From positions 248,001-312,000 of the forward strand of contig NW_025767593.1 in NCBI RefSeq assembly GCF_003918875.1: 64,000 nt of DNA, given 5' to 3'. The position numbers were made by a program, and so were the translations under genes. This stretch comes from Haliotis rubra (Eukaryota). Shown piece by piece: positions 10,201-58,280 of this stretch (the first letter of the stretch is position 1; each line of letters opens with the position of its first letter). The notes under the pieces were generated by a model, which saw only the letters and a list, made by a program, of their open reading frames with translations, had not been told where the DNA came from and did no database searches.

Positions 10201-11649
10201 CTAGCACCAGCCGGGGCTCCAGACACCGTTAAAGTTGACCGGGTTAGATCGAGGGTCAGAAGGTGGATCCATCGCAGGCACCCGAGTCGCATTCTTCAGG
10301 GCCAGCATCTGCAGGAGGAAGTTGACGAGGGTGGGGTTGTCCTTCGAGATGTCATGGTGCTCCGTGGGGTCGGCGCGGATGTTGAAAAGCATGACACTGT
10401 CAGAGGGAGAGTCGTCCATGGCAGAGCCGTCTATGTCAGACCCAGCAGGGGGGTACCACCCTGCGTACCCAGGGTCACCAACGATCAACTTCAGGTCTCC
10501 CCATCTGAGAGCTGCGGCGTAGTGGTCGTCGTAGATGTTGTAGACAAATTCATTCCTTATGCTACTGCCTCCGTTCAGGATCATGTCGACTTGACTCATT
10601 CCGTCGATATCCAGTTTACTGGAGTCTCCCCCAGCTATGTCCAGTAACGTAGGGTACCAGTCCACAGCATGGAACATCCCAGGGTGAGTGTAGCCTCTCT
10701 TCTTCAGCAGAGTCTTACTGTAGACGAAACCGGCTCCTCTGGTTCCTCCCTCCCATAATGTAGTTTTTCCGCCCCTCAGAGGCCAGTTATTACCACCAGC
10801 AAAGGGAAGCCCACCATTGTCTGTTGTAAACACAAGTAGCAGATTGTCCATGAATCCAAGGTCCTCCAGGACGGTGGTGATGTTGTACACAGCATCGTCC
10901 AAAGCACTCACCATACCACTGTAAACCATCCTATCCAAATCATGAATGTGGCTGTAGCGATCGGAATATTTAGCAGGCACCTGCAGGGGTCCATGTACAG
11001 CTTGAAACGGCAGGTACAGATACATGGGCTTGGATTTGTCGTGGTTCATTATGATATCGATGGCTCTCTTTACAAACACGTACGTGGAGTACTCCCCTTG
11101 TGCGTCTTTGTAGACCTCTGTCATGTTTCTGAAGTCATATCCATAGTAATCAGCTAGCTCGTCCCTGACATGAGTGAAATAGTCCTCCATACCTGCATAG
11201 TAGCCCATGAAGGTGTCGAAGCCTCTGTAGGTGGGAGTGTACTTCAAGTTACAGAAGCCGAGGTGCCACTTGCCGACCATGTGGGTATCATAGCCGAGGG
11301 TCTTCAACCTCTGTGGGATGGTGATTATGTCCGCCGGCATGTACTTGGGTTGTTCTATAAAGACTACATTATCCTGGAGCCCCGTGTGGTAGGGGAACTT
11401 GCCCGACATGAAGCAGTTTCTTGAGGGGGAACACAGCGGTAGGACGTAGGAGGAGTTGAGGATGACGCCGTCACGGGCGAGGCGGTCAAGTGTCGGCGTC
11501 TGGATGTCCGGGTTGATCCAGCCGACGTCATTCCAGCCAAGGTCATCTGCCACGATGAAGACGATGTGTGGTTTGTCAGCAGCAGCAACAGTGCTTGTGA
11601 AACACGAGACGACCACAGCAGCGAGAACAGTGTAAAGCGTCATGGCCAT
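10201..11649 (-). CDS. Arylsulfatase B-like sulfatase, copy 1 (482 aa, intronless, signal peptide)
   Basis: Uninterrupted ORF with hydrophobic N-terminus. Contains ADDLG, CSPSR (formylglycine motif), GKWHLG, AVHGPL, TDNGG and RGGK, and the animal ARSB-type C-terminus. Start placed at MAMTL by alignment to the paralogs. Confidence 0.95.
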   Translation of the reverse strand: MAMTLYTVLAAVVVSCFTSTVAAADKPHIVFIVADDLGWNDVGWINPDIQTPTLDRLARDGVILNSSYVLPLCSPSRNCFMSGKFPYHTGLQDNVVFIEQPKYMPADIITIPQRLKTLGYDTHMVGKWHLGFCNLKYTPTYRGFDTFMGYYAGMEDYFTHVRDELADYYGYDFRNMTEVYKDAQGEYSTYVFVKRAIDIIMNHDKSKPMYLYLPFQAVHGPLQVPAKYSDRYSHIHDLDRMVYSGMVSALDDAVYNITTVLEDLGFMDNLLLVFTTDNGGLPFAGGNNWPLRGGKTTLWEGGTRGAGFVYSKTLLKKRGYTHPGMFHAVDWYPTLLDIAGGDSSKLDIDGMSQVDMILNGGSSIRNEFVYNIYDDHYAAALRWGDLKLIVGDPGYAGWYPPAGSDIDGSAMDDSPSDSVMLFNIRADPTEHHDISKDNPTLVNFLLQMLALKNATRVPAMDPPSDPRSNPVNFNGVWSPGWC

Positions 11650-11699
11650 GTAGCAATTGAGGACATGGACCTTCTGCGTTAAGGTCAGTGTGTATCTCA

Positions 11700-11800
11700 C
11701 TCTTATCAGATCACGTGCAAGGCTACGTTCTTATCATGAACCATTTCACACAGACGTCCTATTTCATGTTACTTATTTCAAGTGACGATAAGGTCACCCA
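11700..11800 (-). promoter_or_regulatory. Conserved upstream module of the sulfatase genes (GATA sites, CACGTG E-box, AGGTCA half-site)
   Basis: CTTATCAGATCACGTGCAAGGCTACGTTCTTATCAT. Homologous blocks lie at ~27037-27072, 35171-35193, 39523-39567 and 58369-58421. Confidence 0.55.
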
Positions 11801-11846
11801 GACATACCAATATCTCCCTCTCTCCCCTTCTCTGTGTTTACTGGTA

Positions 11847-12270
11847 TATGATGATGATGATCATAGGATATTTATATAGCGCACATATCCACGCAACTAG
11901 TACATGTTCAAGGTGCTTGAGCGTTCCTTTGATCAAACGATGTCTTTTTTTCTGGAATTTTTTTAACCATCTCAATTGCCTGGTAGGTATTCAGCTTCTG
12001 CACCTTGTTAGGCGCAGCGAGTTATAACACAGCCTCATCCTTACAAGGTACCCATTTGCCGCTGGGTGGACAGGGACACATAGTCACAGTGTTTTGTCCA
12101 ATGATACTGCACGTCACTATACCCACAACTACGTGTCTGCACGTGTGTCCACCATCCACCTACCGTCTGATGAGTGGGTTTTTTTAAGGGTGTGTACTGC
12201 ACTGTAGGTTTTGTGACCACACTGAACGAGCCTGAAAGTAATCTTAGGTCCAAGGTTTTTACACACGACT
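11847..12270 (-). mobile_element. Probable old SINE remnant (Deu-domain-like core)
   Basis: (ATG)n tail at the left end and GGTACCCATTT-x-GCTGGGTGGAC...GTGTTTTGTCCAA core. Family assigned from memory only. Confidence 0.4.
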
Positions 12271-15485: not shown

Positions 15486-16870
15486 CTACAACTTCAATAT
15501 TGTCGCCATTGTGGGTCCACATTCATAACTTCTGAGGGGTCCACCATTTCTAAAGACCATGACGTTTGTTTTTTTCAAGTTCACTTTCATTCCAGTTTCT
15601 AAGCAAAATAATTTCAGAGCATCTATTTTCATTTGGTGTTGAACATTTGAATATGCTACAGAGGACACGTCATCGGGAAACACTATTCCAAAAACATTTG
15701 TAAAGTCTTATGAGATAAAAACACCATCTCCTCCAACATCTTCCAGTTGTTTTGTGGGGTTTATAAAGCGTTGGCTCGTACCCGGGTTGATCCCATATGA
15801 TAAATGAGTTGAGGAATATGATACAAGAGGGCTCAAAACAGCCGTGGAGGCTGCCATATTATTGAAATAATCCGTTAATCCTCTTGAACCCCTCACACAA
15901 GCACACGGCCTGAATACAAAGATGGAAGTACATTATAAACGTTTCCCTTAATTCCAACATCCTTCAAACTGTGTAATAAAATAGCATGTCTTATAGTGTC
16001 AAATGCATTTGAAAAGACCACAAAAAGGCAGTAAAATTTCCCTTTCCTTTTTCTGGTATATTTCTGTATCATTGCTTGCAGATTGAATATATAGTAGAAT
16101 AGTTGAGTAATTTGATCTTAAACCTGCCTGATGATATTGTCTTCACAGAAAGTCTTGAGTCTCCAGTTTAATATTTAGTAGTACATATTTTACACATGGT
16201 ATCAATCAATGAAATTTCCATGTAGTTGTTAACATCATTCTCATCCCCAGATTTGAAAAGAGGGCAAATAATACTTCTATTCCAAACAGTAGGAAATACA
16301 CCACTGTCAAATATCTGATTGTAAAGGACTGTAATTGTTGGTAAACTAGTACTTGTGATCAACTCCATCTGGTCCAGGTGATATATTATTTGCTAACTCT
16401 TTAATATGCTGTTCAACTTCTTGGCGGCTAATAGGTTGATTTAATTCTGCTGTTGTAACACTGTCATCTTCATCTATAGTAGGAGGTAAAGTAGGTGTAT
16501 GTTCTGTTTGGAGGAGAGACGAAAAGTGATCTGTGCATTCCTGGGTACTGATTCCTTCTGGCATGTGTGATTGTCTCCCCCGTTTCAACAATTTCCAGAA
16601 TATTTTAGGGTTTTATCTTGAATCAATTAGTTTTTGTTTCTGTTCATCCTGGTAGGATTATATTTTGATAATAAATGCTTTCTTGAATTTAATGCGTAGC
16701 CCCCTGAATAGGTTAAAGTCCAAGTTATGGTCGCTATGCCCCCTCAGTGCACGATATTTCTCATTCTTTAGGTCTTCAAGTTCACTGTCCCACCAGGGAG
16801 GTTGACTGTATAATTTGGACTTGGAATTATGTTACAACTGGTGAAGTAGACTCTCTTGTTTATAGATGCT
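15486..16870 (-). mobile_element. LINE reverse-transcriptase remnant (CR1/L2/RTE-X-like)
   Basis: SPGPDGV; YNQIFDSGVFPTVWNRSIICPLFKSGDENDVNNY; MFPDDV...GMKVNLKKTNVMVF. Frameshifted. Confidence 0.8.
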
Positions 16871-16885
16871 GCTTCTTGATAAACA

Positions 16886-17053
16886 GGGCGGTGGGGTAGC
16901 CTAGTGGTTAAAGCGTTCGCTCGTCACGGCGAAGACCCGAGTTCGATTCCCCACATGGATATAATGTGTGGAGCCCATTTCTGGTGTCCCCGCCGTGATA
17001 TTGCTGGAATATTGGTAACAGCGGCGTAAAACTAAACTCACTCACTCACTCAC
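16886..17053 (+). mobile_element. tRNA-derived SINE with 12-bp TSD
   Basis: A box TAGCCTAGTGG, B box GTTCGATTCC and an (ACTC)n tail. TSD TCTTGATAAACA at 16874-16885 and 17054-17065. Confidence 0.92.
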
Positions 17054-17306
17054 TCTTGATAAACATTAACAAGTAAACATAATGCAGAGTTCTGACCAGG
17101 GAGTTGCTTCATTGCCACTTGCGACACACTTGCCATGGGTTTGTAGATCATTGGAGTCTTAATGGATGAAATCCAACTTACAGAAGTTTTACATCGCTGT
17201 CCCAAATGGAGATCTCATTAACTCAATATCGGGCCCAAATCGGTTGTTTTACACAGTCAAATAGTAAAGAAGAAGACCTACATTACTTACAATAGGAGGG
17301 AAAGGT

Positions 17307-18930
17307 ATGAACATGTGCATCAGACTTTTAATCATGTTGAGTTGCCTACCGATTGTGAGTGGAGACGTCGAGTGCAACCAGAGACCCGGTCCGACCACAA
17401 CACAACAAACTACACTGTCAGTGAGTGAAAGCGGCTCAATCGACCTAAAATTAGGGATAAATCGGAAGAAAAAGTACGTACGTTTTTTAGTGGGAAGCTA
17501 CACATGGATAACAGCAAAGATATGATAACTGTGCTCTGAATTTGATAATAACAGTAGTGAAATATAATAAAAACAAAATGAAACAAAGAGATAAAACACC
17601 AAATTTGAACTACATTATGGAAGACGTAAAGACAACATATTATGCTGAACGTTTTAACGCCTATTCAAATTGCAAATATGACAGCTTCACAAAATTTTGG
17701 TCACTATGTCACAATCTGTTCTGTTAACCTAGCGCTATATATAATGTACTGCTATTATATTTTCAAGTACCTATTCATTTCCACCTGAATGCACATTTGC
17801 CTGCAAATCGACTTTGAATATATTTGCGAATCATGTTTATACCAACCCGTTATGTAATGAACTGTATGACCTGGATGTATGGAGAATCAAAATAAATAAT
17901 AAAAAAAAGGATATGACAAGCATACGTGCACACAGACTAAATCAGAGAAGAAATGATTCTCCTATCATAGCAAAATTCCTCCTGACAAATGATAAGAGCA
18001 ATATTTTCAAGCAAACCTATATAGGAATCACAGGAACGAAGAGCTAGGACACGAGTGACAGAATATTTTCCGCAGTCAGTGCCCGAGGATCGACGAGCAT
18101 TATCGCCGTGGTTTGTGCAAGCGCAAGATGCGGGAAAACCTAAAATGTGTCTCAACAAGATGCTAGTTCAAGGGAAAGTAGTCGTGTATGACAAAATGTC
18201 TATGTTCGTCAAGAATATTTCACGCAATCAACCACACAGCTTACAACCAACAGGTAACCAGCGCACATGGGCATATTTTGTTTGGACCCGGAAACAGGGG
18301 ACGCCCCACTCCAAGGGAGGCTACTCCCATGCCGATGTCTCAAAACATAAACACGTGAAGAGATGGCCACGGCCTCACATTTTACATTCTTTCATGGAAC
18401 ACAGAAGGATTACATAAACACGATACCCAAGATTCGCAGGTAAAACGTTTTTGCTCGTATTATGACTAGATTGCCTTGTATGATTTGAAACGTTTTCGAT
18501 CATGTAACAGTGTACGGATAAAAACTACGAAATTTGGTCGGTACAGTGATTGCGTAATAATTTTCACCAGACAGTCATGGCTGAATGTATGAACATTTTG
18601 AAAATACATGGGTTTTCCTGTTCAAAACATCAAGATTAGGTAGTGTAAATCATACAGTACTGATTCTGACATATCTTTCACCTGAAAACTCTCACATCTA
18701 TGAGGATACAGATAAAGATGGCATGTCTGTTTTGGAGGATTATTTGACCCAGATAGTTTATGACCACCCTGATATGGAACTTTTCTTAACAGGTGATTTG
18801 AACGCAGGACTAAAACATTCCTTGAATACATACCTGAAGATAACACTGACTTCGTACAAAAAGGCTCTGATGAATACCCCACTGACAGCTTTGAAGTTCC
18901 CAGGAGCAATACGGATTCAGATACAAGAAG
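17307..18930 (+). mobile_element. Non-LTR retrotransposon 5' remnant (ORF1 with degenerate 2A-like motif plus endonuclease), apparently interrupted by an A-tailed LINE fragment at ~17475-17908
   Basis: SGDVECNQRPGP; IRAHRL...PIIAKF...VTEYFP (ORF1 C-terminus); YLSPENS...LTGDLNA (APE endonuclease). Confidence 0.6.
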
Positions 18931-25003: not shown

Positions 25004-25533
25004 CAGACAGCTCAGTCATACTCAGTTCAGTTCCAAAAAATGGAGTTGTGTTTAGCTTTAAAATCAGTCAACACGATGCATATGCTTGATTACCCTTACG
25101 TTCTTTTGAAAGGGACAGCTAGTTGCGTTATTTCAACCACATTCAAGGCTACAGCCACGGGCCACTTTAAACGTAATCGTTTCCTTTATTTAAACATATT
25201 AACATGATCTGGTCTTTTCCAGCCACAAAATATACGCGAGCACAGAGTCACGAAAATACAGCCACAAACAACATTACAAGTGACCACAGAAGTGATCGTT
25301 TCCTTTATTTAAAATATATTTATCACAATCATTCTGTCAGTGCACTTTCTGTAAAACACATTAAAATGCATGCCGAAAGGTTCATCTACAACTGGGTGTC
25401 CAACATTACCGGATCCTTTTTTCATGCATAAATACATGGGCACGTAAAGTAACATAAATCACACTTGTTTAAACTGGTTACATAACATCGGGATTCGGTG
25501 GCGCGGATGGTCACGTGACTGCATTCAATTATT

Positions 25534-26982
25534 CTAGCACCAGCCAGGACTCCAGGCACCGTTAAAGTTGGCCGGGTTAGATTGAGGATCAGAGGGTGGA
25601 TCCATCGCAGGCACCCGTGTCGCATTCTTCAGGGCCAGCATCTGCAGAAGGAAGTTGACGAGGGTGGGGTTGTCCTTGGATATGTCATGGTGCTCCGTGG
25701 GGTCGGCGCTGATGTTGAAGAGCATGACACTGTCATGGGGAGAGTCGTCCACTACGGAGAAGTCTAAGTCAGAACCAGCAGGGGGGTACCACCCTGCGTA
25801 CCCAGGGTTACCAACGATCAACTTCAGGTCTCCCCATCTGAGAGCTGCGGCGTATTTGTTGTCGTAGATGTTGTAGACAAATTCATTTCTTACGCTGCTG
25901 CCTCCATTCAGGATCATGTCGACTTGACTCATCCCGTCGATATCCAGTTGACTGGAGTCTCCCCCAGCTATGTCCAGTAACGTAGGGTACCAGTCCACGG
26001 CATGGATCATCCCAGGGTGAGTGTAGCCTCTCTTCTTCAGCAGAGTCTTACTGTAGACGAAACCAGCTCCTCGGGTGCCTCCCTCCCATAATGTGCCTTT
26101 CCCACCCCTCAGAGGCCAGTTATTACCACCATCATAGGGTAGACCACCATTGTCTGTTGTAAACACAAGAAGCAGATTGTCCATGAATCCAAGGTCCTCC
26201 AGGACAGTGGTGATGTTGTACACAGCATCGTCCAAAGCACTCACCATCCCACTGTAAACCATCCTATCCAAATCATGAATGTGGCTGTAGCGATCGGAAT
26301 ATTTAGCAGGCACCTGCAGGGGTCCATGTACAGCTTGAAACGGCAGGTACAGATACATGGGCTTGGATTTGTTGTGGTTCATTATGATATCGATGGCTCT
26401 TTTCACATATATGTACATCGAGTATTCCCCTTGTGCGTCTTTGTAGACATCTGTCATGTTCCTGAAGTCAATTCCATAGTAATCAGCAAGCCTGTACCTG
26501 TCATGAGTGAAATAGTCCACCATACCTGCGTAGAAGCCCATGAAGGTGTCGAAGCCTCTGTAGGTGGGAGTGTACTTCCAGTTACAGAAGCCGAGGTGCC
26601 ACTTGCCAACCATGTGGGTATCATAGCCCAACGTCTTCAGCCTCTGTGGGATGGTGATTATGTCCACCGGCATGTACTTGGGCTGCTCTATGAAGACCAC
26701 ACGATCCTGGAGCCCCGTGTGGTAGGGGAACTTGCCCGACATGAAGCAGTTTCTTGAGGGGGAACACAGCGGCTGGACGTAGGAGGAGTTGAGGATGACG
26801 CCGTCACGGGCGAGGCGATCAAGTGTCGGCGTCTGGATGTCCGGGTTGATCCAGCCAACGTCATTCCAGCCAAGGTCATCTGCCACCATGAAGACGATGT
26901 GTGGTTTGTCAGCAGCAACAGCAGTGCTGGTGAAACACGAGACTACTACAGCAGCGAGAACAGCGTAAAGCGTCATGGCCAT
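25534..26982 (-). CDS. Arylsulfatase B-like sulfatase, copy 2 (482 aa, intronless)
   Basis: Intact ORF with the same motifs as copy 1. Candidate AATAAA (minus strand) at 25304-25309. Confidence 0.95.
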   Translation of the reverse strand: MAMTLYAVLAAVVVSCFTSTAVAADKPHIVFMVADDLGWNDVGWINPDIQTPTLDRLARDGVILNSSYVQPLCSPSRNCFMSGKFPYHTGLQDRVVFIEQPKYMPVDIITIPQRLKTLGYDTHMVGKWHLGFCNWKYTPTYRGFDTFMGFYAGMVDYFTHDRYRLADYYGIDFRNMTDVYKDAQGEYSMYIYVKRAIDIIMNHNKSKPMYLYLPFQAVHGPLQVPAKYSDRYSHIHDLDRMVYSGMVSALDDAVYNITTVLEDLGFMDNLLLVFTTDNGGLPYDGGNNWPLRGGKGTLWEGGTRGAGFVYSKTLLKKRGYTHPGMIHAVDWYPTLLDIAGGDSSQLDIDGMSQVDMILNGGSSVRNEFVYNIYDNKYAAALRWGDLKLIVGNPGYAGWYPPAGSDLDFSVVDDSPHDSVMLFNISADPTEHHDISKDNPTLVNFLLQMLALKNATRVPAMDPPSDPQSNPANFNGAWSPGWC

Positions 26983-33604: not shown

Positions 33605-35053
33605 CTAGCACCAGCCGGGGCTCCAGGCACCGTTGAAGTTAACCGGGTTAGATCGAGGGTCAGAAGGTGGATCCATCGCAGGCACCCGTGTCCCATTCTT
33701 CAGGGCCAGCATCTGCAGGAGAAAGTTGACGAGGATGGGGTTGTCCTTCGAGATGTCATGGTGCTCCGTGGGGTCAGCACTGATGTTGAACAGCATGACA
33801 CTTGGGAGGGGAGAGTTGTCCATCTCAGGGATGTCTATGTCTGACCCAGCGGGGGGGATCCACCCTGCATGCGAGATGTCACCAACCATCAACTTCAGAT
33901 CTCCCCATCTGAGGGCTGCGGCGTAGTGGTCGTCGTAGATGTTGTAGACAAATTCATTTCTTACGCTGCTGCCTCCGTTCAGGATCATGTCGACTTGACT
34001 CATTCCGTCGATATCCAGTTGACTGGAGTCTCCCCCAGCTATGTCCAGTAACGTAGGGTACCAGTCCACAGCATGGAACATCCCAGGGTGAGTGTAGCCT
34101 CTCTTCTTCAGCAGAGTCTTACTGTAGACGAAACCGGCTCCTCTGGTGCCTCCCTCCCATAATGTTGCTTTCCCGCCCCTTAGAGGCCAGTTATTAGCGC
34201 CATGGCTCGGAGGACCACCATTGTCTGTTGTAAACACGAGAAGCAGATTGTCCATGAATCCAAGGTTCTCCAGGACGGTGGTGATGTTGTACACAGCATC
34301 GTCCAAAGCACTCACCATACCACTATAAACCATCCTATTCAAATCATGAATGTGGCTGTAGCGATCGGAATATTTAGCAGGCACCTGCAGGGGTCCATGT
34401 ACAGCTTGAAACGGCAGGTACAGATACATGGGCTTGGATTTGTCGTGGTTCATTATGATATCGATGGCTCTCTTTACAAACACGTACGTTGAGTACTCCC
34501 CTTGTACGTCTTTGTAGACATCTGTCATGTTCCTGAAGTCATAGCCATAGTAATCAGCCACCTCGTCCCTGACATGAGTGAAATAGTCCTCCATACCTGC
34601 ATAGTAGCCCATGAAGGTGTCGAAGCCTCTGTAGGTGGGAGTGTACTTCCAGTTACAGAAGCCGAGGTGCCACTTGCCAACCATGTGGGTATCATAGCCC
34701 AGGGTCTTCAGCCTCTGTGGGATGGTGATCAGGTCCGCCGGCATGTATTTGGGTTGTTCTATGAAGACTACTTTATCCTGGAGTCCTGTGTGGTAGGGGA
34801 ACTTGCCCGACATGAAGCAGTTTCTTGAGGGGGAACACAGCGGCTGGACGTAGGAGGAGTTGAGGATGACGCCGTCACGGGCGAGGCGATCAAGTGTCGG
34901 CGTCTGGATGTCCGGGTTGATCCAGCCAACGTCATTCCAGCCAAGGTCATCTGCCACGATGAAGATGATGTGTGGTTTGTCAGCAGCAGTGCTAGACTTC
35001 AAACAGGAGGAAAAGGCTAGAAGCGCTAGAACAGCTGAAAACCGCATGGTCAT
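33605..35053 (-). CDS. Arylsulfatase B-like sulfatase, copy 3 (482 aa, intronless, divergent signal peptide)
   Basis: Intact ORF with all catalytic motifs. N-terminus MTMRFSAVLALLAFSSCLKSSTAA differs from the other four. Confidence 0.95.
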   Translation of the reverse strand: MTMRFSAVLALLAFSSCLKSSTAADKPHIIFIVADDLGWNDVGWINPDIQTPTLDRLARDGVILNSSYVQPLCSPSRNCFMSGKFPYHTGLQDKVVFIEQPKYMPADLITIPQRLKTLGYDTHMVGKWHLGFCNWKYTPTYRGFDTFMGYYAGMEDYFTHVRDEVADYYGYDFRNMTDVYKDVQGEYSTYVFVKRAIDIIMNHDKSKPMYLYLPFQAVHGPLQVPAKYSDRYSHIHDLNRMVYSGMVSALDDAVYNITTVLENLGFMDNLLLVFTTDNGGPPSHGANNWPLRGGKATLWEGGTRGAGFVYSKTLLKKRGYTHPGMFHAVDWYPTLLDIAGGDSSQLDIDGMSQVDMILNGGSSVRNEFVYNIYDDHYAAALRWGDLKLMVGDISHAGWIPPAGSDIDIPEMDNSPLPSVMLFNISADPTEHHDISKDNPILVNFLLQMLALKNGTRVPAMDPPSDPRSNPVNFNGAWSPGWC

Positions 35054-37986: not shown

Positions 37987-39435
37987 CTAACACCAGCCGG
38001 GGCTCCAGGCACCGTTGAAGTTGACAGGGTTAGATCGAGGGTCAGAGGGTGGGTCCATCGCAGGCACCCGTGTCGCATTCTTCACGGCAAGCATCTGCAG
38101 AAGGAAGTTGACGAGGTCGGGGTTGTCCTTGGAGATGTCATGGTGCTCCGTAGGGTCGGCGCTGATGTTGTACAACATAACGCTTCCGAGGTGAGAATCG
38201 TCCATGACGGGGACGTCTATGTCTGACCTAGGAGGGGGGTACCATTCTGAGTACCCAGGGTTACCAACGATCAACTTCAGGTCTTCCCATCTGAGAGCTG
38301 CGGCGTAGTAGGCGTCGTAGATGTTGTAGACAAATTCATTTCTTACGCTGCTGCCTCCGTTCAGGATCATGTCGACTTGACTCATTCCGTCGATTTCCAG
38401 TTGACCGGAGTCTCCCCCAGCTATGTCCAGTAACGTAGGGTACCAGTCCACAGCATGGAACATCCCAGGGTGAGTGTAGCCTCTCTTCTTCAGCAGAGTC
38501 TTACTGTAGACGAAACCAGCTCCCCTGGTGCCTCCCTCCCATAATGTGGCTTTCCCACCCCTCAGAGGCCAGTTATTAGCACCAGCAAAGGGAGGACCAC
38601 CATTGTCTGTTGTAAACACAAGAAGCAGATTGTCCATAAAACCAAGGTTCTCCAAGACGGTGGTGATGTTGTACACAGCATCGTCCAAAGAACTCACCAT
38701 ACCACTATAAACCATCCTATTCAAATCATGAATGTGGCTGTAGCGATCGGAATATTTAGCAGGCACCTGCAGGGGTCCATGTACAGCTTGAAACGGCAGG
38801 TATAGATACATGGGCTTGGATTTGTCGTGGTTCATAATGATATCGATGGCTCTTTTCACAAACACGTACGTGGAGTATTCCCCTTGTACGTCTTTGTAGA
38901 CATCTGTCATGTTCCTGAAGTCATAGCCATAGTAATCAGCCACCTTGTCCCTGACATGAGTGAAATGGTCCTCCGTACCTCCATAGTAGCCCATGAAGGT
39001 GTCGAAGCCTCTGTAGGTGGGTGTGTAGTTCCAGTTACAGAAGCCGAGGTGCCACTTGCCAACCATGTGGGTATCATAGCCCAGGGTCTTCAGCCTCTGT
39101 GGGATGGTGATTATGTCCGCCGGCATGTATTTGGGCTGCTCTATGAAGACCACACTATCCTGGAGCCCCGTGTGGTAGGGGAACTTGCCCGACATGAAGC
39201 AGTTTCTTGAGGGGGAACACAGCGGCTGGACGTAGGAGGAGTTGAGGATGACGCCGTCACGGGCTAGGCGGTCAAGTGTCGGCGTCTGGATGTCCGGGTT
39301 GATCCAGCCAACGTCATTCCAGCCAAGGTCATCTGCCACCATGAAGACGATGTGTGGTTTGTCAGCAGCAGCAACAGTGCTGGTGAAACACGAGACTACT
39401 ACAGCAGCGAGAACAGCGTAAAGCGTCATGGCCAT
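37987..39435 (-). CDS. Arylsulfatase B-like sulfatase, copy 4 (482 aa, intronless)
   Basis: Intact ORF. Start placed at MAMTL by alignment. Candidate AATAAA (minus strand) at 37839-37844. Confidence 0.95.
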   Translation of the reverse strand: MAMTLYAVLAAVVVSCFTSTVAAADKPHIVFMVADDLGWNDVGWINPDIQTPTLDRLARDGVILNSSYVQPLCSPSRNCFMSGKFPYHTGLQDSVVFIEQPKYMPADIITIPQRLKTLGYDTHMVGKWHLGFCNWNYTPTYRGFDTFMGYYGGTEDHFTHVRDKVADYYGYDFRNMTDVYKDVQGEYSTYVFVKRAIDIIMNHDKSKPMYLYLPFQAVHGPLQVPAKYSDRYSHIHDLNRMVYSGMVSSLDDAVYNITTVLENLGFMDNLLLVFTTDNGGPPFAGANNWPLRGGKATLWEGGTRGAGFVYSKTLLKKRGYTHPGMFHAVDWYPTLLDIAGGDSGQLEIDGMSQVDMILNGGSSVRNEFVYNIYDAYYAAALRWEDLKLIVGNPGYSEWYPPPRSDIDVPVMDDSHLGSVMLYNISADPTEHHDISKDNPDLVNFLLQMLAVKNATRVPAMDPPSDPRSNPVNFNGAWSPGWC

Positions 39436-39761
39436 GAAGCAATCCCTGTACATGTAACGAGATAGTGGGCATACCTTATGACATTGCATGATCCTTCTGC
39501 GTTGCGGTCAATATATGTCTCACTCTTATCAGATCATGTTACATGTGCAAGGCTTTCTTCTTATCATCATTATGTACTCGAATGAAAGCGCATATATCAA
39601 ATGATTTAAACAATGTGTATATATTCTAAATGATCCATCTATTTTTCCCTTTGCACTAAACAGAGTTGTTTTTGGGAATGGTCAAGACTGTTTTTTATTC
39701 TTCTGCTCGGCCATCTGAGTGAATGTGTCTGATGGTGGATTGAAGTCCTTGACATACATCC

Positions 39762-47305: not shown

Positions 47306-50300
47306 TTACAAATCAGTTAACAAATCTAATTCTCTTAAAAATGCAATAATTAAATGAGAACTAACATTATTAAAAAGATCCTTCATAGTTCGATTTGAAA
47401 TAGTTATCCCTTGTGATGGAATATTCGATGCAGTCAAGCAAGACATGCTTGACCGTGATTCTTTCATCACAAGGGATGCAAAATGGAGGATCTTCTCCTT
47501 TAAGCAAATATTCATGGGTATACCTTGTATGGCCAATGCGACATCGCCGCATAATGACCTCTTCAAATCTGGACTGACAACCCAAGTAAGTGTAACCGAT
47601 ATAGGGTTTTATTGCATGTAATTTATTGATACCTACTTGGGTGTCCCACTTCTTTTGCATCAGATCACGGATGTAAGATCTAATGCAAGCTTTGTAATCA
47701 GAGTATGGGAGCAGAAGTGGTGTCACAGATTTGTTGAGTGCTGCCTTAGCAGCAATATCAGCCATTGTGTTCCCAGAAATGCCAACGTGGCTGGGTAACC
47801 AACAAAAGACGATGTCGCATTGGCCAGTAGCAAGCTCATTATACAATTCAATAATTTCTAACAAAAGTGGATGTTTGCAAGAAAGATTTTTAATAGCCTG
47901 AAGACACGAAAGAGAATCTGAAAAGATGATATATTGTTTATATTTACGGTGTTTATTAATATATTTAAGAGCTGTTAGTATTGCGTTTGCTTCTGCTGTG
48001 AAAATTGAACTGTCATTGGGTAGTCTGGAAGATATTGTTTTGGACCCAATGACAGTGGCACAAGCAACCGCGCCACCATCCTTGATCCATCTGTATATAA
48101 GGATTTATAGGTATTATATTTATTTCTTAATTGACTAAATTCTTGTTTATACTGTAAATCATTAGTTTCGGATTTTTAAATGTGGTTAATGTTAAGTCAA
48201 CGTCTGGCCTCACCAATTGCCAAGGAGGAAGAAAAAAGACGAGAAGGAGATATATTCTCCAGCTCAATGCCGGCAGCAGAAAGGAATGGTTTAATTCTGT
48301 GCCCAAGAGGCGGAACAAGAGAAGGCTTTTTGTTATACAAATCCTCATAAAGAGGAGTGAAGATGCAGTGAAACGCAGGATTAGACTCGTTAGAATATAG
48401 CTTCGTAATATACTGTAATGATAATTTTATACGGCGTTGGGTAAGAGAAGGCTCATCTGCCTCGACGTAGAGACTGTCAACAGGAGATGTTCTGAAGGAC
48501 CCAAGACAAAGTCTCAGACCTTGATGGTGGACTGAATCTAAGAGTTTTAGGTTGCTTTTGCAGGCTCCACCATAAACGATGGAGCCATAATCAAGCTTCG
48601 AGCGGACAAGTGATCTGTAAAGGTGTAGGAGCGTAGCTTGATCCCCTCCCCACCTTGAATTAGACACGACTTTCAATAAATCAAGTGCCTTCAGGCATTT
48701 AGTTTTGAGAGATTTGATATGCGGAAGAAAAGTTAAATGGGAGTCGAAAATGAGACCTAAGAACTTGGCCTCTTTACAACCTTGATGGGAGTGCCATTTA
48801 AAACAGTTCTGGGTCTTTATGTGGTTTATATTTACGGCAGAAATGTATGCAATTAGTTTTGGATTTAGAAAATTTAAAGCCGTTTTCAAGACACCATTTA
48901 TTTATTTTGTTTAAACACAGCTGCAATTGACGTTCAATAGTATGCATATTTTTACCACGACAAGAAATATTAAAATCATCCACAAAAAGTGATCCATCAA
49001 TGGAGTCGTTTAAAACGTTAGCTAAACTGTTAATCTTTATGCTAAATAAAGTGACAGACAAAATACTGCCCTGTGGGACACCCTGATCCTGATTGTAATG
49101 ATCAGACAGGGTTGAACCCACGCGAACTTGAAATTGCCTGTCAGATAAAAACTCGGCTATAAACTGAGGCAAACGGCCCCGTAAACCAAAATCATGTAAA
49201 TCTTTTAAGATGCCGTACTTCCATGTCGTGTCATAAGCTTTTTCTAGGTCGAAAAAGATTGACACTGCATGTTGCTTGTTAATAATGGCATTCTTAACAA
49301 ATGATTCCAGTCGAACTAAATGGTCAATGGTACTGCGATTTTTACGAAAACCACATTGAATATTTGTGATTAAATTATTAGATTCTAGGTACCAAGTTAA
49401 TCTGTTATTGATCATGCGTTCCATGGTCTTGCAAACGCAGCTAGTCAAGGAAATGGGCCTATAATTAGATGGATCGGTATGATCACGTCCAGGTTTGGGT
49501 ATGGGTACAACGATGGCATCACGCCAGGATGAAGGAAAGTTACCAGTTGTCCAAATTTCGTCAAAAATATTCAAAAGTGTCTCTAGACATGATCCAGGTA
49601 AATGTTTTAGGAGTTGATAATGAATACCATCAGCTCCTGTAGCAGTATTATGAGCTTGTTCAAGAGCATTATGAAGCTCATGAATAGAAAAGATTTCGTT
49701 GTAATCTTCCCGTTATCTGAATGAAAATTTATATTTTTCTTCTCCTGCTGTTGTTGGTATTTTTGAAAGTTAGAACATAGTTAGACGAGGATGAATGTTT
49801 CGCAAGTGTTTCACCCAGTTTATTTGCAATATCAGATTTATTAGTTACCAATTGATCTCCAGATTTTAGATGGTGTATGCTGGATTTATTACCCTTACCT
49901 TTAATTTTCTGGATCATGTTCCAAACCTTTGACATCGGCGTTCGTGAATTAATCTTTGAAACATAATTTCGCCAAGATTGGCGTTTATTTTGTTTAAAAG
50001 TACGCCGGGCTTTAGCATTTAAAATTTTAAACTTATTTAAATTATGGACCATTGGATGGCGACGGAAATACTGTTCAGCTTTCTTCCGTGCCTTCCTAGC
50101 TTGTTTGCAATCAGCTGTAAACCATGGTTTACGTATGTGAGGATTTGCAGAGGACTTCGGAATACACTCATCTGCTATCTCATGAAGGTAGTCGGAGAAA
50201 CGTTTAATAGGGTCGGGGACATCAATAAACATATCAGGATTTAGTTGATTACTGCAAAGAGTTTCATAAAGAACCCAGTCAGCTTTAGCAAAATTCCATC

Positions 50301-50986
50301 TTGTTGACGGAGGAACATCAGATGGTGTCACAGATGTTAATATGGTAGGAAAATGGTCACTACCGCATAGGTCATCATGAACTGACCATTCGAATTCACT
50401 CAGCAGATTAGAGTCAAACCACCGACAAATCTAGGCAAGAGTAAGATCCTGTCGCAGGATGTAGATATGTATGAGAACCATCATTTAAAAGGCATAAATC
50501 ATTATTAAGGAACATTTCCTCAAGCAATTTTCCTCTGGTATTGATGGCAGTACTACCCCAGAGAGGGTTATGGCCATTTAAATCTCCCGTGATAACACAG
50601 GGCTTAGGAGCTGGTCATAAAGTGCTTGAAGATCAGACTGTTGAAGTGAATAAGATGGTGGTATATATATAGAACATAATGTGAAAACAATATTTAACGT
50701 TATGCATTATATAGCAACAGCCTGGAGAGGAGTATTTAGCGGAACAGGACTGTGAATGATACCCCGCCTCACCATAACAGACGATCCTCCAGAGGACTTG
50801 TCCCGGAGGAGAAAAACAATGATATGAATCATATTGTCGAGGGTCAAAATTATCATTGTGTTTAAGGAAGGTTTCCTGTAAACAAAATACTGAGGGTTTA
50901 AAATCCTGAATTAATAGTTGGAGATCATTCATGTTTTTCCGAAGTCCTCTACAATTCCATTGTATTATATCAGCAGAGTAGCTCAT
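47306..50986 (-). pseudogene. LINE ORF2 (APE endonuclease, reverse transcriptase, RNase H), split by frameshifts
   Basis: IIQWNCRGL...CLQET; NYRPISLTS; FFDLEKAYD; GVPQGSILS; LFVDD; WLPSHVGISGNTMAD; RCRIGH. Confidence 0.92.
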
Positions 50987-52260
50987 GGAGGTTCAACTGG
51001 AGGTCGTGAGTCGCATGAATGTCCTTTACGCACTGGTAGCTTATGGGGAGACATCCATAGCAAGAGGTTCAAAGGTGTTGTGAACCTCCGCAGGAACTAA
51101 CAATGGGGAAGGCACCTCAATATGTTTAAGGGCCCTGGATTCTTTTTTTTTTGTTTTGTTTTTCTCTTCTCGTGAGGTGAAACGTTGGTTTTCAATCCAC
51201 TTGATCGGTTCAGGTCGTGATTCCAATACGGCAAAGTGACTGAAAGAGCTGTATTTTGCAGCTGAGGTTCAGTTTCGCGAAGCTGATGAAACGAATTTAG
51301 ATGGTGTGTTGTTGTCTTCAGCGCCAACTGGATACAAGTGTGTCTGTCCATTTGACAGCCAGCTATTAGGTGTTTGACATCCTGTATCAACTTTTGTAAT
51401 AGATGAGACAGCCGCAGAGTATGTCAGTGTAGAAGTGGATAGAGACGACTCGTTTGCAACCAATCTCTTTGCTTCAGTGAATGATATATCATTACTATAT
51501 TTCAATTTGAGAATTTTAGTCTGCGTAAGAAAAGCAGGACATGACTTTGAAGAGGAGTTAGCACATCTGATGGTATCAGTGCAGTCAGTGCTGACATGCT
51601 TCTTACTGCAGCGGGCGTAAACTGGTGAGCTACGACAGGATTTAGCCCCATGGCCAAACTGCTGACATTGAAAACAACGTAGTGGATGAGGTATATAAAC
51701 GTCTACCCCTAAGTTGAAGTATCCAGCTTTGATAGAAGATGGAATCTTTGAAAGCCCAAAAGTGAACAGATACGTATTGGTCTGAATAATATTGTCACCA
51801 TCTTTCCTACTAAACCGTTTCACAGATGTGACACATTGTGACTTCAGTTCAGATAGGATCTCATCTTCAGACATATCGGAGAGGCATTTTGCACGCATCA
51901 CGCACGATACCTCTACACCTAATTGAGCGCTTTGTGGATCGAGACAGCAATCTCAGTGGTAGCAAAGTGATGAGCTTTAAGAAGATTCAGAGATTGGTGT
52001 CTCTTTGCACATTCCACAAGCAGGGAACCAGAGCGAGACGAGTTACATTTTGACTGTTCCACATATGCCTCTCGATGGATTTTGAAATAACTTAATGGAT
52101 TAAGTTTGAGGGGCGCACCATCCATTCCATTCACGACCAGAAATCGTGGCCAAGAATCAACAGTGTACAAAGATTCTTCATCAGAAGACGTTCCAGTGTC
52201 AGTGTCAACGTGCCGTCTTTTAGTTTTGGATCGTGAACCAGTGAGTAATTGGGTAGCCAT
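50983..52260 (-). pseudogene. LINE ORF1 (gag-like nucleic-acid-binding protein), frameshifted
   Basis: WPRFLVV...SGSLLVEC and YIPHPLRCFQCQQFGHGAKSC. Confidence 0.88.
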
Positions 52261-55950: not shown

Positions 55951-56069
55951 AACGGTACACTTGTTCCACCATTGTGGACCTTGGCAGTATAACATCATAA
56001 GTCACGATATGGCTGACATACTGCCGATGTGACTTTACATTTCAACTCACTCACTCAGTACATCATTAC

Positions 56070-56235
56070 GGGGCGGTGGGGTAGCCTAGTGGTGAAAGCG
56101 TTGGCTCGTCACGCCGAAGACCCGGGTTCGATTCCCCACATGGGCACACTGTGTTAAGCCCATTTCTGGTGTCCCCCGCCGTGATATTGCTGGAATATTG
56201 CTAAAAGCGGGGTAAAACTAAACTCAGTCAGTCAG
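56070..56235 (+). mobile_element. tRNA-derived SINE with 15-bp TSD
   Basis: Same family as 16886-17053. TSD TCAGTACATCATTAC at 56055-56069 and 56236-56250. Confidence 0.92.
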
Positions 56236-56834
56236 TCAGTACATCATTACACTGAGTAGTACTGGTTGTCATCACACAGAAGAATCAAGTAACGACCACT
56301 TATATCACAAGAGAGGGGTCAAACAACACACTCCATCTCAATCACCAGTAGTAGCCAGACATGCTCCTGCATTGCACTTGGCACAGGAAGCAGGTTAAAA
56401 TGGATCCCCGCTCTTTTCAAGTTCATTTCCAACAAATTAATTTGCAATTGCATGCAATACAATACATATACCTCTTTGCAAGACTTGATTACTCTTTCGT
56501 ACCTTCGCATATGGACAGGCACTTCAGGTTATTTCAACCACATTCAAGGCTACAGCCACAGACAACTTTGGAAGTGACCTCAGGAATTATCGTTTCCTTT
56601 ATTTAAGTATATAGATCACAATAATTCTATCTGTAAAGCATATTAAAATGAATGCTGAAGTCGTTGAAAGGTTCATCTCCAACTGCGAGTCCTACATAGT
56701 TGGGTCTTTTTTCAGGCATAATAACTATATTTGCGAATATACAGCCACGTAAATCAGACTTAAGTTTGTTACATGACTTAGGGATGTCATCTATCATCGG
56801 ATGGTATGGTAAATAAATATTGCAGTCAAGGAAT

Positions 56835-58280
56835 CTAGCACCATCCGGGACTCCAGGCATCTTTGAAGTTGGCCGGGTTAGATCGAGGGTCTGAGGGTGG
56901 GTCCATCGCAGGAACCCGAGTCCCATTCTTCAGGGCCAGCATCTGCAAGAGGGAGTTGACGAGGGTGGGGTTGTCCTTGGAGATATCATGGTGCTCTGTC
57001 GGGTCGGTGCTGATGTTGAACAGCATAACGCTGGGGAGACGAGAGTCGTCAATGAGGGGGACGTCTAAGTCAGACTCAGGAGGAGGGTACCATCCTGAGT
57101 ACCGACCAGGGTTACCAACGATCAACTTCATGTCTCCCCATCGAAGAGCTGCGGCATGGTGGGCGTCGTAGATGTTGTAGACAAATTCATTCCTTACGCT
57201 GCTGCCTCCATTCAGGATCATGTCGACTTGACTCACCCCGTCGATATCCAGTTGACTGGAGTCTCCTCCAGCTATGTCCAGTAACGTAGGGTACCAGTCC
57301 ACGGCATGGAACATCCCAGGGTGAGTGTAGCCTCTCTTCTTCAGCAGAGTCTTACTGTAGACGAAACCAGCTCCCCTGGTGCCTCCCTCCCATAGTGTGC
57401 CTTTCCCACCCCTCAGAGGCCAGTTATTACCACCTTGAGTTGGAAGCCCACCATTGTCTGTTGTAAATACAAGAAGCAGATTGTCCATGAATCCAAGGTT
57501 CTCCAGGACAGTGGTGATGTTGTACACAGCATCGTCCAAAGAACTCACCATACCACTGTAAACCATCCTATTTAAATCATGAATGTGGCTGTAGCGATCG
57601 GAATATTTAGCAGGCACCTGCAGTGGTCCATGTACAGCTTGAAACGGCAGGTACAGATACATGGGCTTGGATTTGTCGTGGTTCATTATGATATCGATGG
57701 CTCTCTTTGCAAACACGTACGTGGAGTATTCCCCTTGTGCGTCTTTGTAGACATCTGTCATGTTCCTGAAGTCATAGCCGTAGTAGTCAACAAGCCTGTA
57801 CCTGTCATGAGTGAAATGGTCCTCCATACCTCCATAGTAGCCCATGAAGGTGTCGAAACCTCTGTAGGTGGGAGTGTACTTCCAGTTACAGAAGCCGAGG
57901 TGCCACTTGCCAACCATGTGGGTATCATAGCCAAAGGTCTTCAACCTCTGTGGGATGGTGATCAGGTCCGCCGGCATGTACTTGGGTTGTTCAATGAAGA
58001 CTACACTATCCTGGAGCCCCGTGTGGTAGGGGAACTTGCCCGACATGAAGCAGTTTCTTGAGGGGGAACACAGCGGCTGGACGTAGGAGGAGTTGAGGAT
58101 GACGCCGTCACGGGCGAGGCGATCAAGTGTCGGCGTCTGGATGTCTGGGTTGATCCAGCCAACGTCATTCCAGCCAAGGTCATCTGCCACGATGAAGACA
58201 ATGTGTGGTTTGTCAGCAGCAGCAGCAGTGCTGGTGAAACACGAGACTACTACAGCAGCGAGAACAGTGTAAAGGGTCAT
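56835..58280 (-). CDS. Arylsulfatase B-like sulfatase, copy 5 (481 aa, intronless)
   Basis: Intact ORF with all motifs and a one-residue insertion in NPGRYSGW. Candidate AATAAA (minus strand) at 56598-56603. Confidence 0.95.
   Translation of the reverse strand: MTLYTVLAAVVVSCFTSTAAAADKPHIVFIVADDLGWNDVGWINPDIQTPTLDRLARDGVILNSSYVQPLCSPSRNCFMSGKFPYHTGLQDSVVFIEQPKYMPADLITIPQRLKTFGYDTHMVGKWHLGFCNWKYTPTYRGFDTFMGYYGGMEDHFTHDRYRLVDYYGYDFRNMTDVYKDAQGEYSTYVFAKRAIDIIMNHDKSKPMYLYLPFQAVHGPLQVPAKYSDRYSHIHDLNRMVYSGMVSSLDDAVYNITTVLENLGFMDNLLLVFTTDNGGLPTQGGNNWPLRGGKGTLWEGGTRGAGFVYSKTLLKKRGYTHPGMFHAVDWYPTLLDIAGGDSSQLDIDGVSQVDMILNGGSSVRNEFVYNIYDAHHAAALRWGDMKLIVGNPGRYSGWYPPPESDLDVPLIDDSRLPSVMLFNISTDPTEHHDISKDNPTLVNSLLQMLALKNGTRVPAMDPPSDPRSNPANFKDAWSPGWC

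What the first reader, a model, noticed from the sequence alone, without database searches (positions are those of the whole stretch)
10201..58280. Mosaic sharing of variants among the sulfatase paralogs suggests patchwork gene conversion
Seen: neighbouring segments group the copies incompatibly. TLYAV/VFMV joins 2+4; PADLI joins 3+5; GG..DH and VSSL join 4+5; THDRYRL, GGKGT and NPANF join 2+5; KDVQG, GPP..GANN and GGKAT join 3+4; DLDRM and LEDLG join 1+2; PFA joins 1+4; YDDHY joins 1+3. No single duplication tree explains all of these. Inference: short-tract conversion or unequal crossover shuffles loop variants between intronless copies, a combinatorial route to new specificities.
Basis: partly seen in the sequence, partly recalled or inferred. 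Interest (0 to 1): 0.72.

Follow-up and report, generated by a model that had tools for sequence, protein, structure and literature searches.

The report
Gene conversion among abalone sulfatase paralogs
Five side-by-side copies (plus a sixth elsewhere) of a secreted sulfate-removing enzyme gene in an abalone genome keep exchanging sequence by gene conversion, a well-known process that is new for this gene family; whether it creates new enzyme specificities is untested.

Summary
The window holds five intact sulfatase genes with single-exon coding sequences (ARSB-like, 90-93% nt identity). A sixth close copy (c6) lies on another contig.

No single tree fits:
- 57 of 80 informative sites conflict with the best tree (simulated 34±6).
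- At synonymous sites, 23 of 33 conflict (7-13 expected).
- Among c2/c4/c5 the three exclusive pairings get 7, 9 and 9 sites, arranged in blocks (runs test p=0.004).

The strongest evidence comes from the sister species. The mature coding regions cluster by species (dS 0.14-0.26 within, 0.44-0.67 between). Yet c6's flanks and signal peptide are orthologous only to one H. rufescens copy (AU test p=2e-30). This is concerted evolution by interlocus gene conversion.

Clean recent tracts are not resolvable in this species: PHI and 3SEQ-like tests are not significant. In H. rufescens, PHI gives p<0.001, with tracts of about 100 bp.

Short-read unitigs confirm parts of c3 and c4, so an assembly artefact is unlikely but is not excluded for every block.

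The adaptive "combinatorial specificity" idea is untested (dN/dS <1 everywhere). This is a new example of a known process.

The parts
10201..11646 (-). c1: ARSB-like sulfatase coding sequence in a single exon (the stop-to-stop ORF runs to 11700; the likely start is the MAMTLY Met)
25534..26982 (-). c2: sulfatase paralog. It carries the derived THDRYRL patch shared with c5 and the 24-type blocks shared with c4.
33605..35053 (-). c3: sulfatase paralog with its own signal peptide and 3' flank. Homology to the other copies ends exactly at the stop codon. It shares the MVGxIS-HAGW loop motif and its best upstream hit with H. rufescens copy ruf99_126.
37987..39435 (-). c4: sulfatase paralog (the ORF runs to 39489)
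56835..58280 (-). c5: sulfatase paralog
9902..10200 (-). 3' flank of c1. It is homologous to the 3' flank of c2 (88% over 295 bp) and of c5 (72%), but unrelated to the flanks of c3 and c6.
25242..25533 (-). 3' flank of c2, homologous to that of c1
38132..38314 (-). Hypervariable loop segment of c4 (alignment nt 1032-1208). A 183-nt short-read unitig (run X1) matches it with 1 mismatch, against 25-38 differences to every other paralog. It bridges 17 informative sites of many splits.
33746..33944 (-). Hypervariable loop segment of c3. A unitig from a second, related organism (run X4) matches it with 7 mismatches, against 27-46 differences to the paralogs.

Best explanation
The window carries a tandem array of five genes for secreted, formylglycine-type, ARSB-like sulfatases, each with an intron-free coding sequence. 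The genome matches the published Haliotis rubra assembly in size and contig count. A sixth member (c6) lies on another contig.

The six genes evolve in concert. Repeated non-allelic (interlocus) gene conversion copies stretches of the mature-protein coding region from one paralog into another. The stretches run from tens to a few hundred bases. Conversion needs sequence homology, and homology is kept only where purifying selection holds the sequence. The homogenised region is therefore confined to the mature coding sequence. Signal peptides, UTRs and flanks keep the older, diverged history.

Many overlapping events over a period equal to about a quarter to a half of the divergence from H. rufescens left each copy a fine-grained mosaic. 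Neighbouring segments therefore support incompatible groupings. New mutations are seen part-way through spreading, as derived states shared by different sets of four of the six copies.

Homogenisation is uneven along the gene. The within-to-between-species ratio of synonymous difference is about 0.2 in codons 1-60, 181-210 and 301-330 of the mature protein. It is about 0.8 in the hypervariable C-terminal loop region and the last 30 codons.

Shown: the excess conflict, its block structure, the clustering of coding regions by species, and the orthology of flanks across species. Inferred: the molecular mechanism (non-crossover repair), the tract lengths, and any effect on substrate specificity.
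For: (1) The mature CDS clusters by species. In the third-position tree the species split has 100% support. dS is 0.14-0.26 among the six H. rubra copies and 0.44-0.67 between species.

(2) c6's 250 nt upstream (including the signal peptide) and 150 nt downstream are 73% and 67% identical to H. rufescens copy ruf11_134. They are only 31-44% identical (chance level) to every other copy. The flank trees group c6 with ruf11_134 at 100% and 99% support. The AU test rejects that same grouping for the mature CDS (delta lnL 125.5, p=2e-30; third positions p=1e-12).

(3) Quartet site patterns: the by-species pattern has 46-62 sites, the crossed pattern 0-7 and the orthology pattern 4-15.

(4) Homology of c3 and c6 to the other copies starts at the mature N-terminus and stops at the stop codon.

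(5) Conflict exceeds simulated homoplasy, also at synonymous and four-fold sites.

(6) In the c2/c4/c5 triad the three exclusive pairings have 7, 9 and 9 sites, against a cross-clade background of 1.8 per pair. They lie in 11 runs where 17.6 are expected (p=0.0044). Adjacent informative sites are compatible more often than in permutations (p=0.0045). A GARD-like segmentation gains significantly only with 5 or more segments (p=0.03-0.007).

(7) The ratio of within- to between-species synonymous difference (pS) ranges from 0.18 to 0.83 along the gene.

(8) The independently assembled H. rufescens paralogs give PHI p<0.001 at all window sizes, with tracts of about 80-100 nt.

(9) Short-read unitigs, including some from a second related organism, reproduce mosaic segments of c3 and c4.
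Against: Within H. rubra the classical detectors are weak:
- PHI at w=100 gives p=0.24 (five copies) and 0.19 (six copies).
- No 3SEQ-like triplet survives Bonferroni correction (best 0.18).
- Only c1-c6 nt 1089-1190 (global p=0.002) and c1-c2 nt 1171-1202 stand out as GENECONV-like fragments.
- Compatibility falls to background beyond about 15-50 nt, so part of the conflict could be recurrent mutation. Ten of the 35 synonymous informative sites are CpG transitions.

The triad runs test was chosen after seeing the data.

The assembly was made from ~30x Nanopore reads, with a DBG2OLC hybrid assembly and Pilon polishing (PMC6774278). Such a pipeline can in principle mis-phase paralogs. The reads check covered only parts of c3 and c4, using unitigs of 110-320 nt.

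One-to-one orthology is established by flanks only for c6. For c3 it rests on a weaker flank match and one shared loop motif.
Confidence: 0.8

Rival explanations
1. There is one true duplication tree, and the conflicting sharings are homoplasy. They would come from recurrent mutation at hot sites (CpG) and from parallel or convergent selection on a few loop positions.
For: The fitted rate heterogeneity is extreme (alpha 0.11). Ten of the 35 synonymous informative sites are CpG transitions. The same loop positions (mature residues 137, 139 and 140, the patch after DNGG, and the residue after the catalytic Lys) also vary among H. rufescens copies. PHI at w=100 and the 3SEQ-like tests are not significant in H. 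rubra.
Against: Conflict exceeds simulation even with the fitted gamma, also at four-fold sites. Many conflicting sites are non-CpG transversions. Multi-nucleotide patches are shared identically, for example nt 410, 415 and 419 in c2+c5 and nt 250 and 252 in c1+c2+c4. The three pairings within the triad are 4-5 times the cross-clade background and lie in blocks. Homoplasy also cannot explain by-species clustering combined with cross-species flank orthology.
Confidence: 0.05
2. The fine-scale mosaic is an assembly or polishing artefact. Consensus building from noisy Nanopore reads, de Bruijn contigs in the hybrid step, or Pilon with mis-mapped short reads would have switched between paralogs inside identical stretches.
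For: The assembly pipeline is wtdbg + Racon + Pilon, DBG2OLC with Platanus contigs, and QuickMerge (PMC6774278). The paralogs share identical stretches longer than 31 nt. Logan contigs break into pieces of 100-330 nt inside the genes.
Against: Non-branching unitigs from raw short reads match c4 38132-38314 (1 mismatch, against 25-38 differences to the paralogs) and three c3 pieces (0 mismatches). A second sample and a second related organism carry c3- and c4-specific pieces that bridge incompatible splits, for example c4 38831-38945, which carries both 34-type and 24-type sites. Mis-phasing cannot create the by-species fixed differences. The separately assembled H. rufescens genome shows the same kind of mosaic, with PHI p<0.001.
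Confidence: 0.07
3. The pattern comes from birth-and-death evolution with unequal crossing-over only. All H. rubra copies would be recent lineage-specific duplicates of one gene, and chimeric copies would arise by unequal crossover within the array, without non-crossover conversion.
For: c1, c2, c5 and partly c4 share 50-300 nt of flanks and the signal peptide. H. rufescens has very young sub-clusters (dS 0.02-0.05), which fits recent tandem duplication.
Against: The flanks of c3 and c6 are unrelated to those of the other copies right up to the stop codon, although dS is only 0.14-0.2. A DNA duplication that young would leave alignable flanks. c6 lies on another contig, and its flanks are orthologous to a H. 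rufescens copy about 1 Mb from that species' array. Eleven alternating blocks among three copies would need many reciprocal exchanges without any change in copy number.
Confidence: 0.06

Closest known systems
Concerted evolution by interlocus (ectopic, non-allelic) gene conversion in tandem gene families. Textbook cases include the globin, growth-hormone, RHD/RHCE and opsin duplicates, and yeast duplicate genes whose conversion is limited to coding regions (from my own knowledge).
   Same: Paralogs are more alike within a species than orthologs are between species. Similarity is confined to the constrained coding region and the flanks are diverged. Segments are mosaic and phylogenetically incompatible. 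Homogenisation is weakest near the edge of homology.
   Different: This is a new gene family and a new phylum for the phenomenon, as far as two literature searches show. It includes a member on another contig. The tracts are too old and too overlapping to name donors.
Ectopic gene conversion among glucosinolate sulfatase (GSS) paralogs of plutellid moths (bioRxiv 10.64898/2026.10.12.758433).
   Same: Duplicated arylsulfatase-derived digestive or detoxifying enzymes of a herbivore. There is an excess of by-species ('TOTO') over crossed ('OTTO') site patterns. Conversion is mostly constrained by purifying selection. That paper also warns that positive-selection tests are invalid under conversion.
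   Different: In the moths, enzyme assays, allelic conversion tracts and a link to host shift were shown. Here no substrate, expression or population data exist. The GSS genes have introns, whereas these coding sequences are intron-free.
Human N-acetylgalactosamine-4-sulfatase (ARSB), PDB 1FSU.
   Same: It is the best solved relative (E=6e-118). The sulfatase domain, the C-x-P-S-R formylglycine motif and the metal/sulfate-binding Asp-Asp, Lys-x-His, His, Asp-Asn and Lys positions are conserved. The AlphaFold model has mean pLDDT 93.
   Different: Only about 45-50% identical. The abalone proteins are members of a large lineage-specific expansion (at least 49 matches in the genome). Their substrate is unknown.
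Gene conversion yielding novel combinations in GOT1 paralogs of the copepod Tigriopus californicus (PMC3728101; seen, abstract only).
   Same: The shared idea is that conversion between paralogs makes new combinations, while islands of divergence persist where selection opposes homogenisation. Here the candidate island is the loop at mature codons 361-390, with pS 0.40 and pN 0.18.
   Different: A different enzyme, and two copies rather than six. I did not read beyond the abstract.

Membership tests
Type I (formylglycine-dependent, S1) sulfatase, ARSB-like | Sulfatase N-terminal domain (Pfam PF00884) above the curated cut-off | tested here: met
   All five proteins score 162-167 bits against a cut-off of 25.
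Type I (formylglycine-dependent, S1) sulfatase, ARSB-like | C-x-P-x-R motif carrying the cysteine that is converted to formylglycine | tested here: met
   CSPSR is present in all six H. rubra copies. C73, P75 and R77 are invariant in the 64-sequence alignment.
Type I (formylglycine-dependent, S1) sulfatase, ARSB-like | Conserved metal and sulfate ligands (DD, K-W-H, H, D-N, K) | tested here: met
   D35, D36, K127, H129, H219, D277, N278 and K295 (c2 numbering) are invariant. The sequence aligns to 1FSU at E=6e-118. Assigning these positions as ligands rests on my knowledge of ARSB.
Type I (formylglycine-dependent, S1) sulfatase, ARSB-like | Sulfatase activity and a defined substrate | not testable with these tools
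No RNA run holds the stretch.
Interlocus gene conversion / concerted evolution | Paralogs within a species are closer than orthologs between species, although the duplication predates the species split | tested here: met
   dS is 0.14-0.26 within and 0.44-0.67 between species. c6 and ruf11_134 are orthologous by flanks but not in the mature CDS (AU p=2e-30). Quartet patterns are 46-62 by species against 0-7 crossed.
Interlocus gene conversion / concerted evolution | Phylogenetic incompatibility beyond what homoplasy gives, including at synonymous sites | tested here: met
   57 of 80 sites conflict against 33.8±5.6 simulated. At synonymous sites 23 of 33 conflict against 6.8-13.4.
Interlocus gene conversion / concerted evolution | Conflicting signals are clustered along the sequence (tracts) | tested here: inconclusive
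   For: the triad runs test gives p=0.0044, adjacent compatibility p=0.0045, and segmentation into 5 or more blocks p=0.03-0.007. Against: PHI at w=100 gives p=0.19-0.24, and compatibility falls to background beyond about 15-50 nt. The feature is met clearly in H. rufescens (PHI p<0.001).
Interlocus gene conversion / concerted evolution | Identifiable donor-acceptor tracts with corrected significance | tested here: inconclusive
   c1-c6 nt 1089-1190 has global p=0.002. No 3SEQ-like triplet passes Bonferroni correction.
Interlocus gene conversion / concerted evolution | Direct observation of conversion, either as segregating tracts or in pedigrees | not tested
   A second sample's c3 differs at four clustered sites (alignment nt 195-234), all matching the state of the other paralogs. 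This equally fits ordinary allelic variation.
Adaptive diversification by conversion (combinatorial specificities) | Exchanged variants change function or show excess replacement change | tested here: not met
   Window dN/dS is 0.04-0.62, never above 1. Function cannot be tested here, and selection tests are confounded by conversion.

The most novel reading that the evidence does not exclude
Conversion may be used adaptively. It would keep the catalytic core of the six enzymes uniform while re-assorting a small set of pocket-adjacent loop variants among copies. These are the patch after the catalytic Asp-Asn, the residue after the catalytic Lys, the THVRDE/THDRYR hairpin, and the C-terminal hypervariable loop. 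The abalone would thereby gain a combinatorial panel of sulfatases tuned to different sulfated seaweed glycans. Selection would protect the most diverged loop (mature codons 361-390) from homogenisation.
Probability: 0.15. Interest if true: 0.65.

Novelty: new member of a known kind. Interest (0 to 1): 0.42.

Why it matters
This is a clean, quantifiable case of concerted evolution in a mollusc digestive-type enzyme family. A six-member set, including one member away from the array, is homogenised only across the mature coding sequence.

Three practical consequences follow:
1. Gene trees of these sulfatases mislead about the age of duplications. Copies look species-specific even though at least one locus is older than the species split.
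2. Tests for positive selection on the 'pocket loops' of abalone sulfatase arrays are confounded by conversion.
3. If the loop variants do change substrate range, the array would parallel the moth glucosinolate sulfatases as a second herbivore system in which conversion tunes sulfatases. That would be worth an enzymology test on carrageenan, fucoidan or ulvan oligosaccharides.

Tried and rejected
- PHI test at w=100 on five and six copies was not significant.
- The 3SEQ-like test on 120 parent/child triplets gave nothing after Bonferroni correction.
- GENECONV-like runs that included the signal peptide were dominated by private differences of c3 and c6, so I redid them on the mature part.
- GARD-like segmentation with 2-4 blocks gave no gain over permutations, so there are no large recombinant halves.
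- iqtree with 2 threads and alisim failed in the sandbox. I wrote my own K2P(+gamma) simulator instead.
- The distant paralog cluster on contig C1112 (about 60% aa identity) was tried as an outgroup. Its synonymous sites are saturated, so H. rufescens was used.
- P0121 could not be looked up. Its gene was recovered from L041.
- No RNA run holds the stretch, so expression is unknown.
- Logan contigs inside the genes are only 100-330 nt long, so whole-gene phasing could not be checked.
- The four clustered differences of a second sample's c3 (alignment nt 195-234) were considered as a segregating conversion tract. I rejected them as evidence because the alternative states are simply ancestral.
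Only loop/coil status and sequence adjacency to catalytic residues are reported.
- Earlier notes of this scan near the window concern an unrelated SINE-like element.

Full report
**What is there**

The window is G000:C2703:248001-312000 of a 1.378-Gb assembly in 2855 contigs. That size and contig count match the published Haliotis rubra assembly (1,378,265,264 bp, 2,854 scaffolds; PMC6774278). Cluster names also point to abalone.

Five intact ORFs lie on the minus strand at 10201-11700, 25534-26982, 33605-35053, 37987-39489 and 56835-58280. I call them c1 to c5. Each:
- matches Pfam Sulfatase PF00884 at about 1e-48;
- carries the CSPSR formylglycine motif;
- keeps the catalytic Asp-Asp, Lys-x-His, His, Asp-Asn and Lys positions.

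The closest solved structure is human ARSB, 1FSU, at E=6e-118. An AlphaFold model has mean pLDDT 93.

The genome holds at least 49 matches to this protein. One further close copy, c6, is at G000:C595:99968-101395. The next relatives are only about 60% identical. The coding sequences have no introns. H. rufescens annotations suggest that some genes have upstream non-coding exons.

**Checking the observation**

At DNA level the five copies differ at 95-149 of 1440 aligned positions. They have 70 informative sites spread over 9 of the 10 possible pairings. With c6 added there are 71 biallelic informative sites over 21 different splits, whereas a six-taxon tree has three internal splits.

ML trees are unresolved. 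Ultrafast bootstrap is about 50% and the best five topologies lie within 2.6 lnL units. The fitted gamma shape is an implausible 0.11.

I simulated evolution on the ML tree to ask how much conflict homoplasy alone would give.

| Site class | Informative sites conflicting with best tree | Expected by simulation |
|---|---|---|
| Whole mature CDS | 57 of 80 | 33.8±5.6 (with fitted gamma; P<0.001) |
| Synonymous third positions, invariant codons | 23 of 33 | 6.8±2.6 (K2P); 13.4±3.4 (fitted gamma; P=0.004) |
| Four-fold sites | 13 of 20 | 4.5±2.1 (K2P); 7.1±2.5 (fitted gamma; P=0.026) |

It is not met.

**Structure of the conflict**

The copies fall loosely into two groups, {c2,c4,c5} and {c1,c3,c6}, a split supported by 6 sites. 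Inside the first group the three mutually exclusive pairings have 7 sites (c2+c4), 9 sites (c2+c5) and 9 sites (c4+c5). The nine cross-group pairs average 1.8 sites each, which I take as the homoplasy background.

The 25 triad sites lie in 11 runs where 17.6 are expected (p=0.0044). This gives blocks of roughly 15-300 nt. I chose this test after seeing the data.

More generally:
- Adjacent informative sites are compatible more often than in permutations (p=0.0045).
- Compatibility falls to background beyond about 15-50 nt.
- A segmentation test over all 105 topologies gains nothing with 2-4 blocks. It gains significantly with 5-10 blocks (p=0.03 to 0.007).

The classical detectors are weak in this species:
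- PHI at w=100 gives p=0.24 (five copies) and 0.19 (six copies).
- No 3SEQ-like triplet survives correction.
- Only c1-c6 nt 1089-1190 (global p=0.002) and c1-c2 nt 1171-1202 stand out as long identical fragments.

The mosaic is therefore real but old and fine-grained. Donors and recipients cannot be named.

**Polarising with the sister species**

These include GPP..GANN/GGKAT in c3+c4, Leu in PADLI for c3+c5, and DHY in c1+c3.

Incompatible derived sharings remain: c2+c4, c2+c5, c4+c5, c3+c4, c1+c2, c1+c2+c4 and c1+c2+c5. Seven different four-copy sets share derived states (1236, 1346, 1356, 1234, 2345, 2346 and 1246). This is what mutations part-way through spreading among paralogs look like.

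**Independent evidence for conversion**

H. rufescens has eleven close copies.

| Location in H. rufescens | Copies |
|---|---|
| Contig JALGQA010000099 | five |
| Chromosome-scale contig JALGQA010000011, 43.33-43.40 Mb | four |
| Same contig, 44.35 Mb (ruf11_134) | one |
| Contig JALGQA010000024 | one |

The mature coding regions cluster by species. The third-position tree gives the species split 100% support. dS is 0.14-0.26 within H. rubra and 0.44-0.67 between the species.

c6's flanks tell the opposite story. Its 250 nt upstream (including the signal peptide) and 150 nt downstream are 73% and 67% identical to ruf11_134. They are at chance level (31-44%) to every other copy of either species. 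Flank trees join c6 and ruf11_134 at 100% and 99% support.

So the c6 locus predates the species split, while its mature coding region is 0.14-0.20 dS from the H. rubra array. The AU test rejects c6+ruf11_134 for the mature CDS (delta lnL 125.5, p=2e-30; third positions p=1e-12).

Quartet site patterns follow the logic of the moth sulfatase study. They give 46-62 by-species sites, 0-7 crossed sites and 4-15 orthology sites.

Between c3 or c6 and the other copies, homology begins at the mature N-terminus and ends at the stop codon. In contrast, c1, c2, c5 and partly c4 share 50-300 nt of flank. With dS of only 0.15-0.2, flanks from a duplication that young would still align.

c3 shares a loop motif (MVGxIS-HAGW), several other residues and its best upstream match with ruf99_126. 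This hints at a second old orthologous pair.

**Unevenness along the gene**

The ratio of within- to between-species synonymous difference varies along the mature protein:
- about 0.18-0.20 in codons 1-60, 181-210 and 301-330;
- 0.76 in codons 361-390;
- 0.83 in the last 30 codons.

The 361-390 stretch is a low-confidence coil in the model. It has the highest replacement difference (pN 0.18), yet pN/pS is only 0.45.

This fits two readings: less conversion near the edge of homology, or selection against homogenising that loop. I cannot separate the two.

**Is it an assembly artefact?**

The assembly used ~30x Nanopore reads, Racon, Pilon, a DBG2OLC hybrid and QuickMerge. Such a pipeline could in principle mis-phase paralogs.

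I laid Logan contigs of four runs on 33550-39540, which covers c3 and c4.
- Inside the genes the contigs are only 100-330 nt long.
- A 183-nt unitig of run X1 matches c4 38132-38314 with 1 mismatch, against 25-38 differences to any other paralog. It bridges 17 informative sites.
- Three c3 unitigs match perfectly.
- A second sample (X3) has a 322-nt c3 piece with 4 differences, against 9-14 to the paralogs.
- A second related organism (X4) carries c3- and c4-specific pieces. One (38831-38945) carries both a c3+c4 site and c2+c4 sites.

By-species fixed differences cannot come from mis-phasing. The separately assembled H. rufescens copies give PHI p<0.001 at every window size, compatibility falling from 0.91 to 0.74 with distance, and tracts of about 80-100 nt.

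I rate an artefact as unlikely. It is not excluded for c1, c2 and c5, which I could not check.

**Mechanism and rivals**

Best explanation (0.8): repeated interlocus gene conversion confined to the constrained mature coding sequence.

Rivals:
- Pure homoplasy or convergence (0.05). It fails on the synonymous-site excess, the identical multi-nucleotide patches, the block structure and the species comparison.
- Assembly chimeras (0.07), discussed above.
- Birth-and-death with unequal crossover only (0.06). It fails on the unrelated flanks of c3 and c6, the separate contig of c6, and the number of alternating blocks.

**What is not shown**

The variable patches sit in loops. Two of them directly follow catalytic residues: DNGG-[L/P]P-xx-G[G/A]NN, and GGK-[T/G/A]. 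dN/dS stays below 1 in every window. Expression is unknown. Selection tests are confounded by conversion.

Two earlier notes of this scan describe hypervariable pocket loops in other sulfatase arrays of this genome. I did not test those arrays.

**Novelty**

Concerted evolution by gene conversion is textbook. A recent preprint shows it diversifying glucosinolate sulfatases in moths. Two literature searches found nothing on abalone sulfatases. This is a new member of a known kind, of moderate interest.

Noticed in passing
window 48798-49574 (-), with neighbouring ORFs at 48197-51901: A degenerate retroelement lies between c4 and c5. One ORF matches reverse transcriptase RVT_1 (E=1e-36). The adjacent ORFs have no Pfam match.
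   Followed up: partly
window 36350-36750: A very high-copy repeat lies in the c3-c4 spacer. Contig word depth jumps from about 9 to 3500-36000 in all four runs, with many loose ends at 36441-36629.
   Followed up: no
L032, L037, L038, L041 (H. rufescens contig JALGQA010000011, 43.32-43.40 Mb): Four very young copies (dS 0.02-0.03) have dN about equal to dS (0.020-0.026). They also have a CTPSR motif instead of CSPSR, a 5-residue deletion with an EENN motif in the THVRDE hairpin, and rewritten loops. This is a fast-evolving sub-array.
   Followed up: partly
G000:C1112:1026000-1372000 (L007-L029): A second, much larger cluster holds at least 25 intron-free sulfatase ORFs plus several broken fragments with internal stops. 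They are about 57-62% identical to the window's copies. L020, L021 and L022 look nearly identical to each other.
   Followed up: no
window 34748-34787 (c3, alignment nt 195-234): In a second sample (run X3), and partly in X1, c3 differs at four clustered sites, each matching the state of the other paralogs. This is either ordinary allelic variation at derived sites or a segregating conversion tract.
   Followed up: partly
L032 16492-17949 (-) and long ORFs at 491-4955 and 16534-20199: An integrase-bearing (rve) retroelement lies beside an H. rufescens sulfatase copy.
   Followed up: no
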